A stretch of DNA of 8,179 nucleotides, from assembly GCA_001179505.1 (NCBI GenBank), contig CDMY01000958.1, positions 1 through 8,179 of the forward strand, written 5' to 3'. A program made the position numbers and the translations under genes. Every line of letters starts with the position of its first letter. Positions within the stretch are counted from its first letter, which is position 1. Under the pieces are notes generated by a model. The model searched no databases. It was not told the origin of the DNA and saw nothing but the letters and a program-made list of their open reading frames with translations. The DNA is from Vitrella brassicaformis CCMP3155 (taxonomy: Eukaryota > Protista > Chromerida). Below, piece by piece: positions 1 to 8,179 of this stretch.

Positions 1-205
1 AAGTTCGTCGACGGATTCGAACACAATCCCTCATTGGTGGGCGTCAAGGGCACCGACACAGCTGCCAACGTCGCACCCTTCGACTTCGATATGGGAAACA
101 CACTGGCGCTCCCTGGGAAGTACCATGTGTGTTTCTGTGGCGAGGGCAGCGACTGTATGAATGAAGAAGACTTCTTCGTGCAAGTTGGAAACCTGGAGGT
201 GAAAG
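1..205 (+). CDS. Module 0 (partial, CFC type), exon 1
   Basis: Frame +1 reads KFVDGFEHNPSLVGVKGTDT...GKYHVCFCGEGSDC...FFVQVGNLEVKG, then donor GTAAGA at 206. Homologous to the module at 3626-3997. Confidence 0.85.
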
Positions 206-3200
206 GTAAGAAAGCCTTGAAACTCCTATGGGCTTTTTGCCTGCGATGATGCCGTCGTCTCACAGGTCCAACGGGTGACGAAAACTTTTTTTGCCAGGTT
301 AATCTTCTGGAGAGCTCCTCTTTGCCACAGCAAGAGGCAGATACACCTGGATGCGTCACGTCTTTTGTGTGTACCTTGCCAGATTGTGGGCGAATGTACA
401 GTCAATGTTGCCGGAGAGTGTAAGGCGCGGAGCACTGAATGCGAAATGAATCAGAAATCGTCTGTTGTGATGATGTGCGATGGCAGACTTTGACCCGGCG
501 GACTCCATTCTTGTGTCGGAAAAAAGTCCCACGACCCCACCATGCGATCCCCCGAGCCCTGTGTCAGACTTGCTTGATCCCCAGACTGAGTTTGATATTG
601 TGGCTCTACAAAGTCTTCCGGACAAGTACTCCTTTGGCACCCCTCGGAAAGGTGGAGAATTTGACTTGTGCTGGTGGGAATGCAATAAAAGCATCTGGAG
701 TGATGCTGGAAAGAGTGTCTAATGATGCGCAAGTCAGGTGCCCACAGACAACAAACGGCCAGGTGTGTGCGACTCCGACTGATCAGGAGGCGACAATCAA
801 ACAGAAGTACACGCTCCCTCTTGGAACTCTGACAGTCATAGGTCCCTATGATAAGACAAAAAACACTACACACACCAAAGCCATTGCGGAGCAGGTGCAT
901 TGGAAGAGGGTTTTGTGACGTCTTTCGCAGGCCCCGTTGGCAATGAGACGTTGACATGTGAGGCCGCCAAGGACTGCCCGATTGTAATCAATGGAGCTGG
1001 TCAGTGAGGACCTGAGGGACAGCAGACGACGGACAGACGTGGGCATTGCCAGTCACTAATCTTTTGTGTCTGTAGGCTTCGACGACTACGACAGCCTTAT
1101 GGTCTCTGCGACGCCATGCAGCAGCCCTGAGTTTGTGGAGCCCCTGGGCCTGTTCGCCAACGGCACAGAGGACATCGCCCTGCCCGTCGCCGGCGGCTCG
1201 TCGAAACAAAAGACATTCCGATTCAGCAGCGCCAAGCCACGATTTGGTGGCCAGCAGTTCCATCTCTGCTGGTAAGACAAACAAAACTTGCTGCCGAGAA
1301 GATAAAGACCTGCCGACGATGGTGTCCGAAGGACACTCAGCAGTCACAATTGTGAGTGTCTCTGCGCAGGTGCGCTGCTCCGAACCCGGGCACTCAAGCG
1401 TGTGATAATCGGGTCAGTTTCAATATAGGAGTAGGATCGCTGACTGTGATTGGTAAGGAACTGAGTGAGTGGCAGGACAGGACGAATAGGATCGGATTCT
1501 CTGCGATTTATCGAATCATTCAGGTCCTGACGGAAAGGCGAATGCCGACTGCGATGTGGGGCAAACCTGCACTGCAACTATCAATGGCCATGGTATGAGT
1601 AGAACTTTTGGTAGCTCCCATGTATCTTCTGCAAACTTTCCAGGCATTCAGGACGGCGATACCATTCTAATTTCCACAACACTTTGCGGCCCGGACGATC
1701 CTCCGACCACTCCCGTCACTGACCTGTTTGGCGATCCTAATGATCCCAACAACACGCTGATCGACTACGCACGGGCATCAGGGGGGAGTGGTCAAAGCTA
1801 TAATTTCGGAACATCGCAATACGCCGGGCATTTCTACTTGTGCTGGTGTGGCAAGATAGAACTGTCGCGCCAAAAGAAAGTTTGCATCTGGTGTCTTCTC
1901 TCTGTATCTTTTGCACAGGTGCAAGGGCCCATGCACTCCAACCGATTTGGAGAGCTTCACGACAAATGTCGGCACTTTGGACTTCAACACACTTGCCGGC
2001 GGCATGGCGATTGACGGTACATGAGGGAGAGCAGGATGAAGGAAAAAACCCTGATTGCACATTGTTAACATCCGCTGTCTCTCGCTGAACTGGCGTCCTG
2101 ATAAAAGGCCCTGACGGGTTGGGAGTCTTCGAGTTTTCTCTCGGACAAGAATGCTTCTTCACCATCGAGGGGACAGGTGTGCAGATAGATCACTTAGGGT
2201 CTAGCTATCTATATCAGTTGTGTCCATTTCTTCGGCTCAGGCTTCGACATCATGGATTCGATAATCATTGCTGAGCAGAATGGCGCCAGGCCATGCGCCG
2301 CACCCAGACCTGTTAGGACTCTCTTCCCTCCCAACACTGACATAGGTTGGTTCCACAAGACAGGGGAGTGGGACACTTGACGCGGCTCACTTGGCGGTTT
2401 GCCGTGGATCGACTGGAAAGCCGGTGAACCGTACGCAAACGCCCTTGAAGAGAAATATGACTGGGGCGAAAAACCGCTGCATGGTGGAGAATTTGACCTG
2501 TGTTGGTGAGCTCATGTCACGCGTATGCTATGGGCATGCCCCTTCACCGATGGCTCTGCGTTTGCACTTGCAGGTGCGGAGGACATCAAGCTGGGATCTA
2601 CTGCCCAAACAGTGCGGCAGACATCGTTCACAATTACCTCATACATGCTGGCAACCTGACCGTGAGAGGTATGCCAACTACATACCACCGCAGGCATCTA
2701 TGGCCATCTTTGTCCTCATTCCTGTGCTAGGCCCCAAACATACCGACTTCGCCGCTGTCTGCACAATTGGTGCCGCCAGCTGCAGTCTATCCGGCGTGGA
2801 AATGGGGGGCGAGTCTTCCACAGATTTTCACATCGCGGTGATGGATGGGGACTGCTCATCCAGTGCTCCCGGGACCCTGGTCTCCGGATTCGATCACAAC
2901 CCCCAGACAGGACAGAAAGGCGACACGAACGGAGGCTATGACTTCCCCCTAGGCAAGTTCACGGCGAGCGGGACATTTAAGTTGTGCTTTTGCGACAGCT
3001 GGGTCGGATCGAGTCCCCGGTCGACCTGCACGGCCCAAGTGTTGGGAGGGTTTCCATTCACAGTAGGAACCCTCAAAATCAGAGGTGCTACTGACCATGA
3101 TCTGCGTCTGAGCCGGCGGTGACCATGATCTACGTCTGTGATGCATTCTCGAGCAGGTCCCAAGAGGAATGACTATTTGTCGTCTTGTCCGCTGGGGGCG

Positions 3201-6200
3201 GCGAGTTGCACGGTGTCGGGAATTGAGATCAAGGGCGGCAGTTCGAACGTGGACTTTCACATTGCCATCCTCGACGGCCCATGCGGGTCGGCGGGGGCGG
3301 GCGTGGTATCGCCTTCCTTCGCTCACAACACCTCACAGAGCGGAACAAAGAGCGGCGGTCAATACGACTTCGCTCTTGGCGCCCCGCCAATCGAGCGGCC
3401 GGCGACGAGCGGCCTCGATGGCGAGTACTACATGTGTTTCTGTGACAAGGGGACCGGCTCCGATTGCACGACCGACATGGCCGAGTTCGGAGTCACTGTG
3501 GGTGAATTGAGGTTGACAGGTATGTGCCCACACGCACGGACACCTTCTCACGAGGGACAGACCGCCACCTGGATGGCTCGCTGAACGGCTGGCTGTGTGG
3601 ATCATGGGGGTCCCTCCCTGGTCAGGCCCGACGACCGACAGCCACACAGGTGTGTGCACACGCGGCAAGAGCTGCACAGTGGATCGAGTGCCAGTCGACT
3701 ACGATGCTTCGGAGGCCTACCACGTTGCAATTATGGACCAGCCTTGTTCGGCCACCTCACCCGGCCAGTTCGTGGCGCTGTTCGACGAAAACCCCTCACT
3801 CAGGGGAGCCAAAGGCGCCGATCTCAATCCACCACACGTTGCCGAGTTCAGCTTCCAAATGGGCTCTGGAAATACACTGGCCGAAGCGAGCGCTCTCTAC
3901 CACGTGTGCTTCTGCGGCAAAGGCGCCAACTGCGCCCTCGCCAACGGGGCGACACCTGCCGACTTCCCTGTCACCACAGGCACCGTCACACTCAGAGGTA
4001 AGTAAACACCACACATAGCTTTCCGCATCCTCATGTGCAAGCCAATAAAATGTCCTGACAGGTCCCGTTGGCAATGAGACGTTGACATGTGAGGCCGCCA
4101 TGGACTGCCCGATTGTAATCAATGGAGCTGGTCAGTGAGGGCGTGAGGGGCAGCAGACGACGGACGGACTGGGCATTGCCAGTCACTAATCTCTTGTGTC
4201 TGTAGGCTTCGACGACTACGACAGTCTCATGGTATCTGCGACGCCATGCAGCAGTCCTGAGTTTGTGGACCCCCTGGGCCTGTTCGCCAACGGCACAGAG
4301 GACATGGCCCTGCCCGTCTCCGGCGGCTCGTCGAAACAAAAGACATTCCGATTCAGCAGCGCCAAGCCACGATTTGGTGGCCAGCAGTTCCATCTCTGTT
4401 GGTAAGACAAACAAAACTTGCTGCCGAGGAGATAAAGACCTGCCGACGATGGTGTCCGAAGGACACTCAGCAGTCACAATTGTGAGTGTCCCTGTGCAGG
4501 TGCGCTGCTCCAAACCCGGGCACAGCTGTTGCTTGCAGCGCTCAGGATCTCTCACAATATAGCCTCTCCGCAGGATTTCTGACTGTTAAAGGTAAGATAC
4601 TGCCGGGTGTCTTTTGTACAAGGGTGGTACCTTCTATCCTCTGTGTCGTTGGAATATGAGAGCAGGCCCGGACGGAAAGGCGAAGGTCGACTGCGACAGT
4701 GGGAAGGACTGCACTGTCTCCATAAATGGCACCGGTAAGGCAGTTGTGAAGTGAGTGTCACTAGCTCTAGTGCCACCTTCTATTTTGTCGGCGGAAAGGT
4801 CTTGCGAGCGATGATAAGATGGTCATTTCTTCAACTGAGTGTAGCCATGCCAGCCCTCCGACACCGCTTCTAGACCTATTCGAAGGTGACGATACGAAGG
4901 TCGATTTCGCCACGGCATCTGCGATGTCGGGCGGCGGACAATCTGACTACGACTTCGGCAGGGCATATCGGGGCTCGGCCGTCTCGCTCTGCTGGTACTT
5001 CCCAACAAAACGGCTGCCAAATGGAAAACCCAGGATATGTCTTCACAGGTGTGCGGGACCATCCTGTAACCAAGAAAGTGCTGATCTGGCCGACTTCAAC
5101 ATCCACGCAGGATCACTTCATATCAATGGTACGTGACCTTTGTTATATCCCAAGGCATGCTCCCTGGACGAGATGAGGGAACCAAAGAAGAGACACATGA
5201 CCCACGTCAAACGGGTACGTGCATCAAAGTCTGCGCTCGTGGGTGCAGGCCCTTATGGGAAGGCTGACACTGAATGTGCTGCTGGACGGCCCTGCTCAGC
5301 TACCCTGCAGGGCACAGGTGACACGCCGGGGAGAAGTGATAGAAAGTCTCTCTCACACATCTTCCATTCACTCTGCCGTGTTGATGTGCTTTGTCTGCTC
5401 CGCCCGACCTTTCCTGCTCGTGTCTATCTTGTGTGCTCACCCTCAGGTCTGGCCGATCACGATGACATTGTGGTCGTGTCTACGACGCAGTGCAGCCTCA
5501 GCAGCCCGGCGGCGAGCGGCACCGCTGTGACAGACCTCTTCATTGATATGGCAAACGACCCAAACGACACAAAGGTTGACAGCGCCAGGCAAATTTCAGG
5601 GACATACTCACTCGGCGAGGCGAGATATGGAGGGTCCTTCTACCTGTGCTGGTCAGCGCAAACCCAGGAACTTGCTATGGTGTGCTGCGGACGTCAACGG
5701 CTTTGTGTTTTTCTTCCTCTGTAAAGGTGCACCGGGACTTCATGTGACCCAGCATCACAGCTGCAGATGTTCAACGTCTATGGGGGACAACTCACCATTA
5801 CAGGTCAGTGAAGGACGTGATGACATACGTAAGCTGATCTGCCTTCGAACTTGGTCATTGACACTTATGTCAGGTCCCAAGAGGAATGACTATTTGTCGT
5901 CTTGTCCGCTGGGGGCGGCGAGTTGCACGGTGTCGGGAATTGAGATCAAGGGCGGCACTTCGAACGTGGACTTTCACATTGCCATCCTCGACGGCCCATG
6001 CGGGTCGGCGGGGGCGGGCCTGGTATCGCCTTCCTTCGCTCACAACCCCTCACAGAGCGGAACAGAGAGCGGCGGTCAATACGAGTTCGCTCTTGGCGCC
6101 CCGCCAATAGAGCGGCCGGCGACGAGCGGCCTCGATGGCGAGTACTACATGTGTTTCTGTGACAAGGGGACCGGCTCCGATTGCACGACCGACATGGCCG

Positions 6201-8179
6201 AGTTCGGAGTCACTGTGGGTGAATTGAGGTTGACAGGTATGTGCCCACACGCACGGACACCTTCTCACGAGGGACAGACCGCCACCTGGATGGCTCGCTG
6301 AACGGCTGGCTGTGTGGATCATGGGGGTCCCTCCCTGGTCAGGCCCGACGACCGACAGCCACACAGGTGTGTGCACACGCGGCAAGAGCTGCACAGTGGA
6401 TCGAGTGCCAGTCGACCACGATGCTTCGAGGCCTACCACGTTGCAATTATGGACCAGCCTTGTTCGGCCACCTCACCTGGCCAGTTCGTGGCGCTGTTCG
6501 ACGAAATCCCCTCCCTCACGGGAGCCAAAGGCGCCGATCTCAATCCACCACACGTGGCCGAGTTCAGCTTCCAAATGGGCTCTGGACATACACTGGCCGA
6601 AGCGAGCGCTCTCTACCACGTGTGCTTCTGCGGCAAAGGCGCCAACTGCGCCCTCGCCAACGGGGCGACACCTGCCGACTTCCCTGTCACGACGGGCACC
6701 ATCACACTCAGAGGTAAGTAAACACCACACACAGCTTGCTCTGGACCTCGAACGTGTAAGATTTCGGCTTTGCATTTCATTGCAGGTCCGGCGGACAACG
6801 AGTACCCCGAAATGAAGTGCGTTGCAAGCATGGCTTGCCAGCTGTCGATTGGCTTCACAGGTTAATTAGCGCAACATGCGCCACGCAATTCAGCTTCGGT
6901 GTGTATTGCTCCAGTTCTGCTAGATGTGGCGATGGGCCAACACGATACGATAATGGTCTCTGCGAAATCTGCGAGCCCGTGTACTCCCCCGATCGCCGTC
7001 CGTCCTATGAGGCTGTTCGAAGGCAATGACGATATCGCGGGAACACAGGAGGGCGACACAACCGGGAAGTATGACAGATATGACTTCGGCGTGGCAAGAT
7101 TCGGTGGAAGCTTTGACCTGTGTTGGTAAACATGGCTGTGTCTGGCATCAGTTTGGCCTCCGGAACTTCCCTATTGGCGTCTCTGTCCTCGCTTGCAGGT
7201 GCGGGGGCTCCTCTACTGAGGCATGCGATCCAAGCACACACCAAGGCTTCAAGATTCACGCGGGCGTGTTGACGGTTAAGGGGCCCAGCCCACCTGCTGA
7301 GCTTGATGTGGCTGTCCCCACGTCATGCACGGTGGGCTCTGGATGCACCATCGCTTCGAAAGGCACCAGGGCAGATGCAGCATTGACCACCGGAGGCACA
7401 GGAAATTACACATATGCGATGACCACGAAGCTGCCGGGCAATCGGTACAAGATATGCTGGTGAGTGAGCAAGAGACAGGCAGTCCGCTTCGTTCGTACAC
7501 TGATGATTACCTTCCAGGTGCCCCAACGAAGCGGACTGCACCAATATGACCAACTTTGGCACATTCGCAGGTCTCCTCGATGTGGCCGGTGAGCTCAGAC
7601 GGCGTCCGACACCAACCCGTCCTCTCTTTGCAGCGAGTTTTATTCCCTGCAGGTCCGGCCTTGTATTGTGATTCGTTGGTGTCGACGTCCTGTGAGGATG
7701 TGCTGTGTGCGGCTGGGACGTTTTGTCCTTCGGCGCCCCTCACGATCGGCGGCTATCAGCTGACTGTAGACGACCGCCTGCTGCTGACAAAAGGCAGTGT
7801 GCCGTGCACAGGCGGTCTGCTGGAAGACATCGACGCCAATCCCTCGCCCAACCCATCCAGCAGCACATCGCAAAGCTTCACATTCGGCCTCACTCTCTCG
7901 GAAGCGGGCCACTACCACGTGTGCTGGTGCGGCAAGGGATCGGCCGGAGCCTGCAACACGCCGTCAGCCCACCGCGTGCAAATTGGAACACTGCACATTA
8001 CAGGTCAACAGACAGACAGACAGACAGAGAGGGAGCCAATCAGGGCAGATCAGCCACGGACGGCAGCAAAGGAGGCACTGCTGATATTGCATTCCAGGCC
8101 CAAGCGTGAGCAACTACAACAAACGGTGCAGCCGCGGGTCCAGCTGCACGTATGACGGCATTTCCATCGACTACGACGC
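1..8179 (+). CDS. Interior of a very large multi-exon gene encoding a tandem Cys-rich repeat protein (>1850 aa, probably extracellular/surface; start and stop lie outside the window)
   Basis: Manual splice model: join(1..205,266..297,383..419,487..673,738..841,931..999,1076..1271,1370..1452,1524..1592,1644..1845,1919..2016,2108..2176,2241..2345,2421..2505,2574..2668,2731..3084,3157..3519,3626..3997,4062..4130,4206..4401,4500..4591,4666..4734,4799..4994,5049..5128,5249..5317,5447..5651,5727..5803,5874..6236,6343..6713,6786..6860,6924..7125,7199..7459,7518..7588,7653..8003,8098..8179). All 34 introns are GT-AG with matching phases. The spliced frame is stop-free apart from a 1-nt deletion near 6428. 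Introns recur at homologous positions in the repeat. Confidence 0.88.
266..841 (+). CDS. Module 1 (CWC type, 4 exons)
   Basis: Exons 266-297, 383-419, 487-673, 738-841 give GPTGDENFFCQ|IVGECTVNVAGEY|FDPADSILV...GGEFDLCW|CPQTTNGQVC...LGTLTVIG. Donors at 674 (GTGGGA) and 842 (GTCCCT) are weak and were placed by homology and phase. Confidence 0.7.
928..1393 (+). repeat. Internal duplication/conversion tract A, copy 1 (partner 4059-4523)
   Basis: Manual alignment shows about 20 differences in about 466 nt (about 96% identical), including two complete introns. Confidence 0.95.
931..1452 (+). CDS. Module 2 (CWC type, 3 exons)
   Basis: Exons 931-999, 1076-1271, 1370-1452 give GPVGNETLTCEAAKDCPIVINGAG|FDDYDSLMV...GGQQFHLCW|CAAPNPGTQACDNRVSFNIGVGSLTVIG. 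Donors GTCAGT, GTAAGA, GTAAGG. Confidence 0.88.
1524..2016 (+). CDS. Module 3 (CWC type, 3 exons)
   Basis: Exons 1524-1592, 1644-1845, 1919-2016 give GPDGKANADCDVGQTCTATINGHG|IQDGDTILI...YAGHFYLCW|CKGPCTPTDLESFTTNVGTLDFNTLAGGMAIDG. Confidence 0.78.
2108..2668 (+). CDS. Module 4 (CWC type, 4 exons)
   Basis: Exons 2108-2176, 2241-2345, 2421-2505, 2574-2668 give GPDGLGVFEFSLGQECFFTIEGTG|FDIMDSIII...NTDIA|GEPYANALEEKYDWGEKPLHGGEFDLCW|CGGHQAGIYC...AGNLTVRG. The 75-nt intron 2346-2420 removes an in-frame TGA at 2378. Confidence 0.72.
2731..3084 (+). CDS. Module 5 (CFC type, single exon)
   Basis: GPKHTDFAAVCTIGAASCSLSG...GTFKLCFCDSW...C...VGTLKIRG. Acceptor CTAG ends at 2730, donor GT at 3085. Confidence 0.87.
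3092..3138 (+). repeat. Intronic 19-nt direct repeat (2 copies, 1 mismatch, 9-nt spacer)
   Basis: tgaccatgatctgcgtctg (3092-3110) and tgaccatgatctacgtctg (3120-3138). Confidence 0.85.
3157..3519 (+). CDS. Module 6 (CFC type, single exon)
   Basis: GPKRNDYLSSCPLGAASCTVSG...GEYYMCFCDKGTGSDC...VGELRLTG. Acceptor GCAG ends at 3156, donor GTATGT at 3520. Confidence 0.9.
3626..3997 (+). CDS. Module 7 (CFC type, single exon)
   Basis: GPTTDSHTGVCTRGKSCTVD...LYHVCFCGKGANC...TGTVTLRG. Donor GTAAGT at 3998. Confidence 0.9.
4059..4523 (+). repeat. Internal duplication/conversion tract A, copy 2 (partner 928-1393)
   Basis: Same alignment, offset 3131 then 3130 after a 1-nt intronic indel. Confidence 0.95.
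4062..4591 (+). CDS. Module 8 (CWC type, 3 exons; chimeric near-copy of module 2)
   Basis: Exons 4062-4130, 4206-4401, 4500-4591. Near-identical to module 2 up to CAAPNPGT, then the different tail AVACSAQDLSQYSLSAGFLTVKG. Confidence 0.88.
4666..5128 (+). CDS. Module 9 (CWC type, 3 exons)
   Basis: Exons 4666-4734, 4799-4994, 5049-5128 give GPDGKAKVDCDSGKDCTVSINGTG|LASDDKMVIS...GSAVSLCW|CAGPSCNQE...AGSLHING. Confidence 0.8.
5249..5803 (+). CDS. Module 10 (CWC type, 3 exons)
   Basis: Exons 5249-5317, 5447-5651, 5727-5803 give GPYGKADTECAAGRPCSATLQGTG|LADHDDIVVV...YGGSFYLCW|CTGTSCDPASQLQMFNVYGGQLTITG. Confidence 0.82.
5874..6236 (+). CDS. Module 11 (CFC type, single exon; near-copy of module 6)
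   Basis: Six nucleotide differences from 3157-3519 and the same splice sites. Confidence 0.9.
6343..6713 (+). CDS. Module 12 (CFC type, single exon; near-copy of module 7) carrying a 1-nt deletion frameshift
   Basis: Module 7 has GAT GCT TCG GAG GCC TAC, whereas this copy reads gatgcttcgaggcctac (one G missing near 6428). The ORF track splits the module between ORFs 6312..6815 and 6314..6721. Confidence 0.85.
6786..7280 (+). CDS. Module 13 (CWC type)
   Basis: Exons 6786-6860, 6924-7125 and the 5' part of 7199-7459 give GPADNEYPEMKCVASMACQLSIGFTD|VAMGQHDTIMV...GGSFDLCW|CGGSSTEAC...AGVLTVK. No intron at the following GP. Confidence 0.8.
7281..7588 (+). CDS. Module 14 (shortened CWC module)
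   Basis: GPSPPAELDVAVPTSCTVGSGCTIASKG...GNRYKICW|CPNEADCTNMTNFGTFAGLLDVAG. Introns 7460-7517 and 7589-7652. Lacks the central D-x-I-x-V...C...LF segment. Confidence 0.78.
7653..8003 (+). CDS. Module 15 (single exon, CWC, 8 Cys)
   Basis: GPALYCDSLVSTSCEDVLCAAGTFC...DDRLLLT...PC...GHYHVCWCGKGSAGAC...IGTLHITG. Confidence 0.85.
8008..8027 (+). repeat. (ACAG)5 microsatellite in intron 8004-8097
   Basis: acagacagacagacagacag followed by agagggag. Confidence 0.9.
8098..8179 (+). CDS. Module 16 (partial; runs off the window end)
   Basis: After acceptor TTCCAG (ends 8097): GPSVSNYNKRCSRGSSCTYDGISIDYD, resembling the start of module 7 (GPTTDSHTGVCTRGKSCTVDRVPVDYD). Confidence 0.82.

What the first reader, a model, noticed from the sequence alone, without database searches (positions are those of the whole stretch)
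1..8179. Hidden giant protein made of at least 17 tandem copies of a 6-Cys module I cannot assign to a named family
Seen in sequence: after removing 34 short introns, the window is one reading frame of about 1850 aa built from roughly 95-125 aa modules. Most have six Cys in the pattern C-x2-3-G-x2-C ... C ... C(W/F)C ... C and end in G-x-L-x-(V/I)-x-GP. Inference: alternating hydrophobic strands, paired Cys and N-glycosylation sequons suggest disulfide-linked beta-sandwich domains in a long extracellular rod, such as an adhesin, coat or wall protein. From memory, similar LCWC...GxLxVxGP repeats occur in large uncharacterised dinoflagellate and other alveolate proteins. A link to apicomplexan cysteine repeat modular proteins (CRMPs) is an untested guess.
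Basis: partly seen in the sequence, partly recalled or inferred. Interest (0 to 1): 0.78.

Follow-up and report, generated by a model that had tools for sequence, protein, structure and literature searches.

The report
Cysteine-rich stalk of algal surface receptor
The window is a real, intron-rich piece of a gene of the alga Vitrella brassicaformis that encodes 17 tandem copies of an unnamed six-cysteine, antibody-like domain. It most likely forms the long outer stalk of a polycystin-like surface receptor whose other parts lie on another contig.

Summary
The observation largely holds. The window, which is the whole contig C958 of Vitrella brassicaformis CCMP3155, splices through 34 GT-AG introns into about 1851 codons. 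These form 17 tandem modules of about 115-125 aa; most have six Cys. One claim fails: a 1-nt deletion near 6428, seen against the window's own 98%-identical duplicate, breaks the frame.

New here: each end of the contig overlaps one 203-nt repeat in contig C204 by exactly 74 nt. That is k-1 for the published Velvet k=75 assembly, and the reading frame is kept across the repeat. The window is therefore probably an unplaced loop of the C204 gene. That gene reads signal-peptide-like start, 11 modules, DUF4215, REJ, GPS (H-L-T) and a membrane helix.

The beta-sandwich, extracellular-rod and dinoflagellate readings are supported. The CRMP guess is not. The scan has already noted other REJ/GPS receptors on other contigs of this genome.

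The parts
1..267 (+). Module 1, cut by the contig start. It is the C-terminal half of the same module type as module 16.
   Evidence: E 1.3e-15; 72% aa identity to C204 91959-92165
268..932 (+). Module 2: 120 aa, 6 Cys, four exons
933..1525 (+). Module 3: 116 aa, 6 Cys, three exons. It is the older copy of module 8.
1526..2109 (+). Module 4a: 6 Cys, three exons
2110..2732 (+). Module 4b: 5 Cys (first Cys missing), four exons
2733..3158 (+). Module 5: single exon 2731-3084, 6 Cys, C-F-C type
   Evidence: E 2.7e-38
3159..3627 (+). Module 6: single exon 3157-3519, 6 Cys. It was the target of model 1.
3628..4063 (+). Module 7: single exon 3626-3997, 6 Cys. It was the target of model 2.
   Evidence: (E 4.2e-40)
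4064..4667 (+). Module 8: a duplicate of module 3 (928-1393 matches 4059-4523 at 95.7%)
4668..5250 (+). Module 9: 115 aa, 6 Cys, three exons
5251..5875 (+). Module 10: 117 aa, 6 Cys, three exons
5876..6344 (+). Module 11: a duplicate of module 6 (96% aa identity)
6345..6787 (+). Module 12: a duplicate of module 7 that carries the frame break
6427..6428 (+). Site of the 1-nt deletion relative to copy 3626-3997. It shifts the reading frame.
6788..7283 (+). Module 13: 120 aa, 6 Cys. No intron separates it from module 14.
7284..7654 (+). Module 14: short (83 aa, 5 Cys), with the middle of the module missing
   Evidence: counterpart at C204 90899-91168
7655..8099 (+). Module 15: single exon 7653-8003, 8 Cys. 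It is 96.6% aa identical to C204 91379-91726.
8100..8179 (+). Module 16, cut by the contig end. It is the N-terminal 26 aa of the module type completed by module 1.
   Evidence: 100% aa identity to C204 91824-91901
1..74 (.). 74-nt exact overlap with positions 130-203 of the 203-nt repeat at C204 91830-92032
   Evidence: Velvet k=75
8106..8179 (.). 74-nt exact overlap with positions 1-74 of the same C204 repeat
3154..4021 (+). Two-module segment duplicated at 5871-6737 (97.9% over 868 nt). The shared 106-nt intron is identical in both copies.
206..8097 (+). 34 GT-AG introns. Fifteen lie at module boundaries, all in phase 1 within the Gly codon before Pro. Nine are in phase 2 within the Trp codon of C-W-C. 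The other ten are internal: nine in phase 1 and one in phase 0.

Best explanation
The window encodes part of the ectodomain of a giant surface receptor of Vitrella brassicaformis. It is a head-to-tail array of an unnamed module of about 115 aa with six Cys. The module folds as an Ig-like beta-sandwich, presumably pinned by three disulfides, and modules are joined without linkers (Gly then Pro). That would give a long, stiff, protease-resistant stalk.

The contig is most likely an unplaced loop of the assembly graph belonging inside the gene on contig C204. The full gene would then read: signal-peptide-like start; about 27 modules (11 on C204 plus 16 from the loop); a DUF4215 Cys repeat; a REJ domain; a GPS motif with H-L-T intact; then membrane helices.

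By analogy with polycystin-1 and adhesion GPCRs, the stalk would hold the receptor's tip far from the membrane and pass pulling force or ligand binding to the GPS region.

Shown: the gene model, the repeat family, its spread in dinoflagellates, the absence of a Pfam or PDB sequence match, the 74-nt overlaps, and the REJ, GPS and membrane-helix exons on C204.

Inferred: the disulfides, the rod shape, the surface location of this particular copy, the physical join to C204, and the mechanosensing role.
For: Gene model:
- 34 GT-AG introns at conserved module positions.
- Exon GC is 0.579 against 0.516 for introns.

Family:
- 481 representatives at E<=1e-3 and 51 at E<=1e-30, with up to 42 copies per protein.
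- 561 of 614 near-full copies have exactly six Cys.

Link to C204:
- The last 74 nt and the first 74 nt of the window are 100% identical to the two ends of a 203-nt stretch of C204, leaving a 55-nt bridge.
- 74 equals k-1 for the published Velvet k-mer of 75.
- 2 + 55 nt makes 19 codons, so the frame is kept.
- Neither the repeat nor the C204 downstream sequence has another copy in the assembly.

C204 context:
- DUF4215.
- REJ at E 8e-21 and GPS at E 5.6e-8.
- A strong membrane helix after GPS and a hydrophobic start after an in-frame stop.

The design recurs: on C362, modules are followed by a REJ domain. P0135 (Vitrella CEL95332.1) has a signal-peptide-like start, two modules and a membrane helix.
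Against: - The join to C204 rests on assembly logic, not on reads. C204 as assembled runs straight through the repeat, so a version without the loop may exist (a second haplotype, or a correct assembly with the window coming from elsewhere).
- The frameshift at about 6428 means this copy may not be translatable as written.
- No RNA evidence was available for any junction.
- The signal peptide and membrane helices were judged by a crude hydrophobicity scan only.
- C204 has no PLAT or PKD-channel match, so the polycystin analogy is partial.
Confidence: 0.62

Rival explanations
1. The window belongs to a separate gene for a secreted or wall-bound adhesin or coat protein made only of these modules. 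Its true ends are simply missing from the assembly.
For: Many relatives consist of little but modules (P0003, P0004, P0008). Only the terminal modules resemble C204; the inner ones are 30-55% identical. C204 is assembled without a gap across the repeat.
Against: Both contig ends stop exactly 74 nt into the same C204 repeat. No other contig holds that repeat or any flank for a second gene.
Confidence: 0.15
2. The window is a decaying, non-functional array: a young internal duplication that has picked up a frameshift, or a dead haplotype variant of the C204 gene.
For: A 1-nt deletion lies in module 12. Two recent internal duplications are present. Pooled divergence between the duplicates shows only weak constraint: pN about 0.019 against pS about 0.047, from 14 and 11 changes.
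Against: There is a single lesion in 5.5 kb of coding sequence. All 34 splice sites are intact. No stop codon appears once the one base is allowed for. An error from read-based correction in a 98%-identical duplicate is equally likely.
Confidence: 0.15
3. The module is a divergent member of the apicomplexan six-Cys surface domains (s48/45, or SRS/SAG1-like). The protein would then be a chromerid forerunner of those parasite surface antigens.
For: It has the same size class, six Cys, a beta-sandwich fold and tandem use on alveolate surfaces (the s48/45 features are recalled from memory). The AlphaFold models are sandwiches.
Against: There is no Pfam match at E<=10 for window modules, nor at E<=0.1 for 55 family members. 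No s48/45 or SAG chain appears among the top 50 structural matches of either model. All named relatives are dinoflagellate or Vitrella proteins, none apicomplexan.
Confidence: 0.05
4. [quoted passage not shown]
For: Both are giant, Cys-rich alveolate surface proteins. One dinoflagellate relative (P0019) has an Ephrin_rec_like repeat directly after its modules and membrane helices further on.
Against: CRMPs are defined by an EGF-receptor-like region, Kringle and MAR domains, and many C-terminal membrane helices (PMC9670195). None of the extracellular domains matches in the window, and the C204 context is REJ/GPS instead. No cluster carries a CRMP name.
Confidence: 0.03

Closest known systems
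Polycystin-1 / sea-urchin REJ receptors (PKD1 family)
   Same: A long run of Ig-like repeats lies upstream of a REJ domain, a GPS motif (H-L-T present) and membrane helices, as found on C204. The stalk-plus-cleavable-base logic is the same.
   Different: The repeat here is not a Pfam PKD domain and carries six Cys. C204 has no PLAT and no PKD-channel match. The window's link to C204 is inferred from assembly overlaps, not observed.
IPT/TIG and other E-set Ig-like domains (for example plexin IPT domains)
Uncharacterised giant dinoflagellate proteins (for example CAE7455017.1 of Symbiodinium sp. CCMP2456, 5934 aa; CAE8583051.1 of Polarella glacialis)
   Same: They belong to the same domain family with the same six-Cys signature, in tandem arrays of up to 42 copies.
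   Different: Only 20-30% identical to the window modules. They carry other partner domains: NHL, Neuralized, TSP, F5/8-C-like and Ephrin_rec_like. Their names are automatic transfers from those partner domains.
Apicomplexan 6-Cys (s48/45) and SRS surface domains
   Same: About 120 aa, six Cys, a beta-sandwich, used in tandem on the surface of an alveolate (the s48/45 and SRS features are from memory).
   Different: No Pfam match, and not among the top structural matches.
Cysteine repeat modular proteins (CRMPs)
   Same: Very large, Cys-rich alveolate membrane proteins with a big ectodomain.
   Different: CRMP repeats are EGF-receptor-like, with Kringle and MAR domains (PMC9670195). None was found here.

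Membership tests
Unnamed myzozoan six-Cys 'C-W-C' module family (defined here by profiles A2/A4) | Significant profile match over the full length of the module | tested here: met
   Window modules score E 1e-15 to 4e-40. The profile finds 481 representatives in other organisms.
Unnamed myzozoan six-Cys 'C-W-C' module family (defined here by profiles A2/A4) | Six conserved Cys at fixed positions, including C-W/F-C | tested here: met
   Twelve of 15 complete window modules. 561 of 614 near-full copies in relatives, with each Cys column 86-100% conserved.
Polycystin-1 / REJ receptor family | REJ domain | tested here: inconclusive
   Absent from the window. Present on C204 at 94943-95863 (74.6 bits against a cut-off of 25). 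The join of the window to C204 is inferred.
Polycystin-1 / REJ receptor family | GPS motif next to the first membrane helix | tested here: inconclusive
   Present on C204 at 97546-97656 (33.6-35 bits against a cut-off of 22.5), with H-L-T intact. A membrane helix follows. It is not in the window itself.
Polycystin-1 / REJ receptor family | PLAT/LH2 domain after the first membrane helix | tested here: not met
   The only PLAT match in the genome is on C882, not on C204. Exons after the GPS give no PLAT match.
Polycystin-1 / REJ receptor family | Channel-like C-terminal half (PKD_channel) | tested here: not met
   Of 19 PKD_channel matches in the genome, none is on C204.
Polycystin-1 / REJ receptor family | PKD-type Ig-like repeats (Pfam PKD models) | tested here: not met
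   No PKD model matches any module. Weak PKD-like matches lie only inside the REJ exon of C204.
s48/45 six-Cys domain (PF07422) / SRS | Match to the family profile | tested here: not met
   Zero Pfam families at E<=10 for seven window pieces. None at E<=0.1 across 55 members.
s48/45 six-Cys domain (PF07422) / SRS | Closest fold match and the same disulfide map | tested here: inconclusive
   Not among the top 50 chains for either model, but an unlisted family is not excluded. Disulfides could not be read because no coordinates were available.
Cysteine repeat modular proteins (CRMP) | EGF-receptor-like Cys repeats, with or without Kringle and MAR domains | tested here: not met
   Features taken from PMC9670195. 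No such Pfam match was found in the window.
Cysteine repeat modular proteins (CRMP) | Cluster of about nine C-terminal membrane helices | not testable with these tools
   The window has neither end of the gene.
IPT/TIG (PF01833) | Match to the family profile | tested here: not met

The most novel reading that the evidence does not exclude
An undescribed domain family shared by chromerids, dinoflagellates and probably perkinsids: a six-Cys Ig-like 'C-W-C' module. It would have been recruited, independently of animal PKD repeats, as the force-bearing stalk of GPS-cleavable REJ receptors. On this reading the orphan 8-kb contig is the missing 16-module loop that roughly doubles the ectodomain of one such Vitrella receptor.
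Probability: 0.4. Interest if true: 0.6.

Novelty: new variant of a known kind. Interest (0 to 1): 0.45.

Why it matters
- Domain annotation. Hundreds of giant proteins in coral symbionts and other dinoflagellates, and in the closest free-living relatives of malaria parasites, are built mostly from this module, yet it has no name and no Pfam model. A defined family would annotate thousands of domain copies at once. The alignment, the six-Cys signature and the single-exon constructs given here are a starting point.
- Parallel to animal receptors. If the link to REJ/GPS holds, Vitrella builds polycystin-like receptors with a home-grown Ig-like stalk. That parallels the PKD-repeat stalk of human polycystin-1 and could be tested for mechanosensing in a unicellular alga.
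- Practical point. The work shows how an orphan repeat contig can be placed from k-1 overlaps. It also flags a likely collapse in the reference annotation of this gene.

Tried and rejected
- A least-introns gene model read through non-coding stretches and was dropped. It was replaced by a model anchored on frame and conserved splice positions.
Coordinates were used instead.
- Pfam on window pieces, on C204 exons and on relatives gave no family for the module.
- A PDB sequence profile search gave only a chance hit at E 0.49.
- The word-index search with the module alignment returned nothing. This is expected from its length filter and is not evidence of absence.
Whole short relatives were aligned instead (A4).
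- Foldseek against the PDB gave no match at E<=1e-3 for either model.
- Literature searches for the motif and for REJ receptors in alveolates found no description.
- An 'introner' reading of the conserved 76-nt intron was rejected, because the genome holds only three copies.
- Rfam found nothing.
- The joined spliced protein was never searched or folded. It was translated only inside scripts, to check frame, length and module counts. All searches used single exons by reference.
Full report
**Source**

The window is the whole of contig C958 of a genome of 72,700,666 bases in 1064 contigs. The Vitrella brassicaformis CCMP3155 paper gives exactly these figures (PMC4501334). A paralogous module locus in the same genome (C227) encodes the start of protein P0135. 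That protein is catalogued as CEL95332.1 of V. brassicaformis. The sequence is therefore nuclear DNA of this chromerid alga.

**Checking the observation**

Frame-by-frame translation shows the coding signal hopping between the three plus-strand frames at short intervals. I anchored on stop-free cores and listed every GT/GC...AG pair that keeps the frame. A consistent set of 34 GT-AG introns emerges:
- Lengths are 51-129 nt, median 72.5, 2625 nt in all.
- Acceptors are mostly CAG.
- They leave 35 exons and 5554 spliced bases, about 1851 codons.
- Exon GC is 0.579 against 0.516 for introns.

The claim of one open frame does not hold. Translation of the spliced sequence runs into stops from window position 6813. 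The cause is a single missing base near 6428 in exon 6343-6713, visible against the window's own 99%-identical copy at 3626-3997. With a placeholder at that base the whole 1851 codons are stop-free. The only splice-like way round the break is a 26-nt GT...AG (6405-6430). It is half the size of any other intron here and would remove conserved residues. I therefore read the break as a frameshift, either real or an assembly-polishing error.

**The modules**

Cutting at the recurring G-x-h-x-h-x-G|P ending gives 17 modules: 15 complete, plus one cut by each contig end.
- Twelve complete modules have exactly six Cys (C-x5-6-C, one mid-module Cys, C-W/F-C, one late Cys).
- Modules 4b and 14 have five Cys and module 15 has eight.
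- Module 14 is short (83 aa).

Two subtypes exist. The 'C-W-C' modules are split by two conserved introns. The 'C-F-C' modules sit in single exons.

Intron phases are strikingly regular: 24 in phase 1, nine in phase 2 and one in phase 0.
- All 15 boundary introns split the Gly codon before Pro, in phase 1.
- All nine phase-2 introns split the Trp codon of C-W-C.
- This agrees with another first-stage note on this stretch (s1-197297).

Two recent internal duplications are present: 3154-4021 matches 5871-6737 at 97.9%, and 928-1393 matches 4059-4523 at 95.7%. Pooled over the duplicated exons, there are 14 non-synonymous and 11 synonymous changes (pN about 0.019, pS about 0.047). That is weak evidence of constraint on few counts.

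The minus strand, Rfam and tandem-repeat scans show nothing else except an (ACAG)5 run in the last intron.

**Is it a known domain?**

All searches were made exon by exon, by reference to single-exon modules. The joined spliced protein was not searched or folded.
- Pfam gives zero families at E<=10 for seven window pieces.
- Pfam gives none covering the module in 55 family members holding over 200 copies, or in eight large relatives.
- A profile of seven single-exon modules (A2) finds nothing real among PDB sequences.
- The same profile, run against 1.84 billion cluster representatives, finds 481 proteins at E<=1e-3, 228 at E<=1e-10 and 51 at E<=1e-30. The best is 5041 aa with 42 matched stretches.
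- A local scan of the 150 listed proteins plus the cluster members then on hand finds 1365 copies, with a median spacing of 113 aa.
- Of 614 near-full copies in the 150 best proteins, 561 have exactly six Cys, and the Cys columns are 86-100% conserved.
- Of 30 clusters looked up, every named member is from Vitrella or a dinoflagellate (Symbiodinium, Cladocopium, Effrenium, Fugacium, Polarella, Durusdinium, Gymnodinium). All are 'unnamed' or carry names transferred from other domains.
- The ESM Atlas places the module next to unannotated clusters whose few records are Perkinsozoa.

GP' repeats is thus correct, and so is the statement that no named family fits, as far as Pfam and the PDB go.

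**Fold**

- AlphaFold on module 6 with the seven-row alignment gave pLDDT 67.6 and pTM 0.64, with seven strands.
- Module 7 with a 55-row alignment gave pLDDT 76.1 and pTM 0.73, all-beta. I had checked that the query columns of that alignment were well populated and the Cys columns aligned.
- Foldseek finds nothing at E<=1e-3, only weak Ig V-like rows.

**Where the window belongs**

The window's last 74 nt (8106-8179) are 100% identical to C204 91830-91903. Its first 74 nt are 100% identical to C204 91959-92032. C204 has 55 nt between these two stretches. Identity drops immediately outside the 74 nt on both sides.

The Vitrella genome was assembled with Velvet at k = 75. Neighbouring nodes of such a graph overlap by k-1 = 74 nt. 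The window is therefore a graph node whose two ends both attach to one 203-nt repeat node inside the C204 gene. Three further points fit this:
- The two trailing bases of the window plus the 55-nt bridge make 19 codons, so the reading frame runs on from the window's end, through the repeat, into the window's start or into C204.
- The 203-nt repeat occurs nowhere else in the assembly.
- The C204 sequence downstream of it is single-copy, and the window has no other look-alike.

The simplest path that uses all pieces is: C204 upstream, repeat, window, repeat, C204 downstream. The window is then an unplaced 16-module loop of the C204 gene, possibly skipped when a scaffold gap was closed on the repeat. 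A loop traversed more than once, or present in only one haplotype, is also possible. Only the terminal modules resemble C204 closely: module 15 is 96.6% and module 16 is 100% aa identical. The inner modules are 30-55% identical. So the window is not a mere duplicate of the C204 array.

**What C204 encodes**

On the plus strand from about 86.0 kb, C204 reads as follows:
- A Met at 86048 preceded by an in-frame stop, with a hydrophobic stretch like a signal peptide.
- Eleven modules up to 92165.
- A DUF4215 Cys repeat, weak at E 7.5e-4.
- A REJ domain at E 8e-21, 74.6 bits.
- A GPS motif at E 5.6e-8, above cut-off, with the C-x-C-x-H-L-T cleavage signature intact.
- A very hydrophobic 19-residue stretch with mean hydropathy 3.3, and further hydrophobic exons.

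No PLAT or PKD_channel match lies on C204.

The design recurs. On C362 a module array (77.5-80.7 kb) is followed by another REJ domain at 83.2-84.0 kb. Earlier notes of this scan describe other 'channel-less polycystin-1-like' REJ/GPS receptors on other contigs of this genome (s1-235841, s1-215944). I used these only as a lead and tested REJ, GPS, PLAT and PKD_channel on C204 myself.

A crude hydrophobicity scan across the family gave:
- 22 of 150 representatives with a signal-peptide-like start (many are fragments);
- 47 with at least one membrane-helix-like segment after the last module;
- almost none inside an array.

P0135 of Vitrella has a signal-peptide-like start, two modules and one membrane helix. 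Partner domains in dinoflagellates are extracellular types: TSP3, TSP1-like, F5/8-C-like, Ephrin_rec_like and NHL. A Neuralized domain lies beyond the membrane helices.

**How it most likely works**

Shown:
- the array of Ig-like-predicted six-Cys modules;
- linker-less Gly|Pro joints;
- the extracellular context of relatives;
- REJ, GPS and a membrane helix on the gene to which the window's ends attach.

Inferred: each module is a disulfide-pinned sandwich. About 27 of them in series would form an extended, stiff stalk of roughly 100 nm, assuming about 4 nm per Ig-like domain from general knowledge. The stalk would be released as an N-terminal fragment held non-covalently after GPS self-cleavage. 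Pull or ligand binding at the distal end would be passed to the GPS/membrane part, as proposed for polycystin-1 and adhesion GPCRs. I give this 0.62.

Rivals are a stand-alone adhesin or wall protein (0.15), a decaying copy (0.15, not exclusive), an s48/45-type homologue (0.05) and a CRMP relative (0.03).

**Comparison with what is known**

- It works like the PKD-repeat stalk of polycystin-1. Membership of the PKD1 family is not claimed for the window. REJ and GPS are met only on C204. PLAT, the channel half and Pfam PKD repeats are tested and not met.
- It resembles IPT/TIG domains in fold only.
- CRMPs are defined by an EGF-receptor-like region with Kringle and MAR domains and many membrane helices (PMC9670195). 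None of the extracellular domains is seen here.
- The closest true relatives are the uncharacterised dinoflagellate giants.

**Novelty**

The module family is real, large and, as far as Pfam (2025 copy), PDB sequences and my literature searches show, undescribed. Its fold class and its use as a surface-protein repeat are ordinary. I rate it a new variant of a known kind, with interest 0.45.

**Limits**
- No reads, RNA-seq, SignalP/TMHMM, InterPro or AlphaFold DB were available.
- Absence from apicomplexans was not tested.

Noticed in passing
window 1000-1075 and 4131-4205; C204 90539-90614 (L008:539-614): One 76-nt intron is 88-92% conserved in three places. In C204 the flanking exons are not alignable with the window's, and the intron sits at a different point of the module. 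Only these three copies exist in the genome, so it is not a mobile introner family. Past recombination or gene conversion between arrays is possible.
   Followed up: partly
G000:C362:77512-84019 (L020-L022, L025): A second Vitrella locus has an array of more divergent modules, many with N-x-S/T sequons, followed about 2.5 kb downstream by a REJ domain (51.7 bits). This is the same stalk-plus-REJ design as C204.
   Followed up: partly
G000:C227:190931-191257, minus strand (L019); protein P0135 = CEL95332.1: A small annotated Vitrella protein of 400 aa has a classic hydrophobic signal-peptide-like start, two modules and one C-terminal membrane-helix-like segment. It is the minimal family member and a handy construct for localisation.
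   Followed up: partly
C204 86.2-88.0 kb (L009:6200-8000): The first and third modules of the C204 array are near-identical at the protein level. The host gene has therefore also undergone recent internal duplication, like the window.
   Followed up: no
window 8008-8028: An (ACAG)5 microsatellite lies inside the last intron. The homologous C204 intron carries it too, and a short match occurs on C217.
   Followed up: no
Relatives P0042, P0048, P0053, P0056, P0072, P0077 (3760-4293 aa, dinoflagellate transcripts): A conserved dinoflagellate architecture: N-terminal NHL repeats, 7-12 modules, 5-8 membrane-helix-like segments and a C-terminal Neuralized (NHR) domain. This is a multi-pass receptor class that uses the same module.
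   Followed up: partly
C204 92266-92661 (L008:2266-2661): An exon-like open stretch of about 130 aa lies between the last module and the DUF4215 repeat. It has conserved-looking Cys and no Pfam match, so it may be another unnamed ectodomain piece.
   Followed up: no
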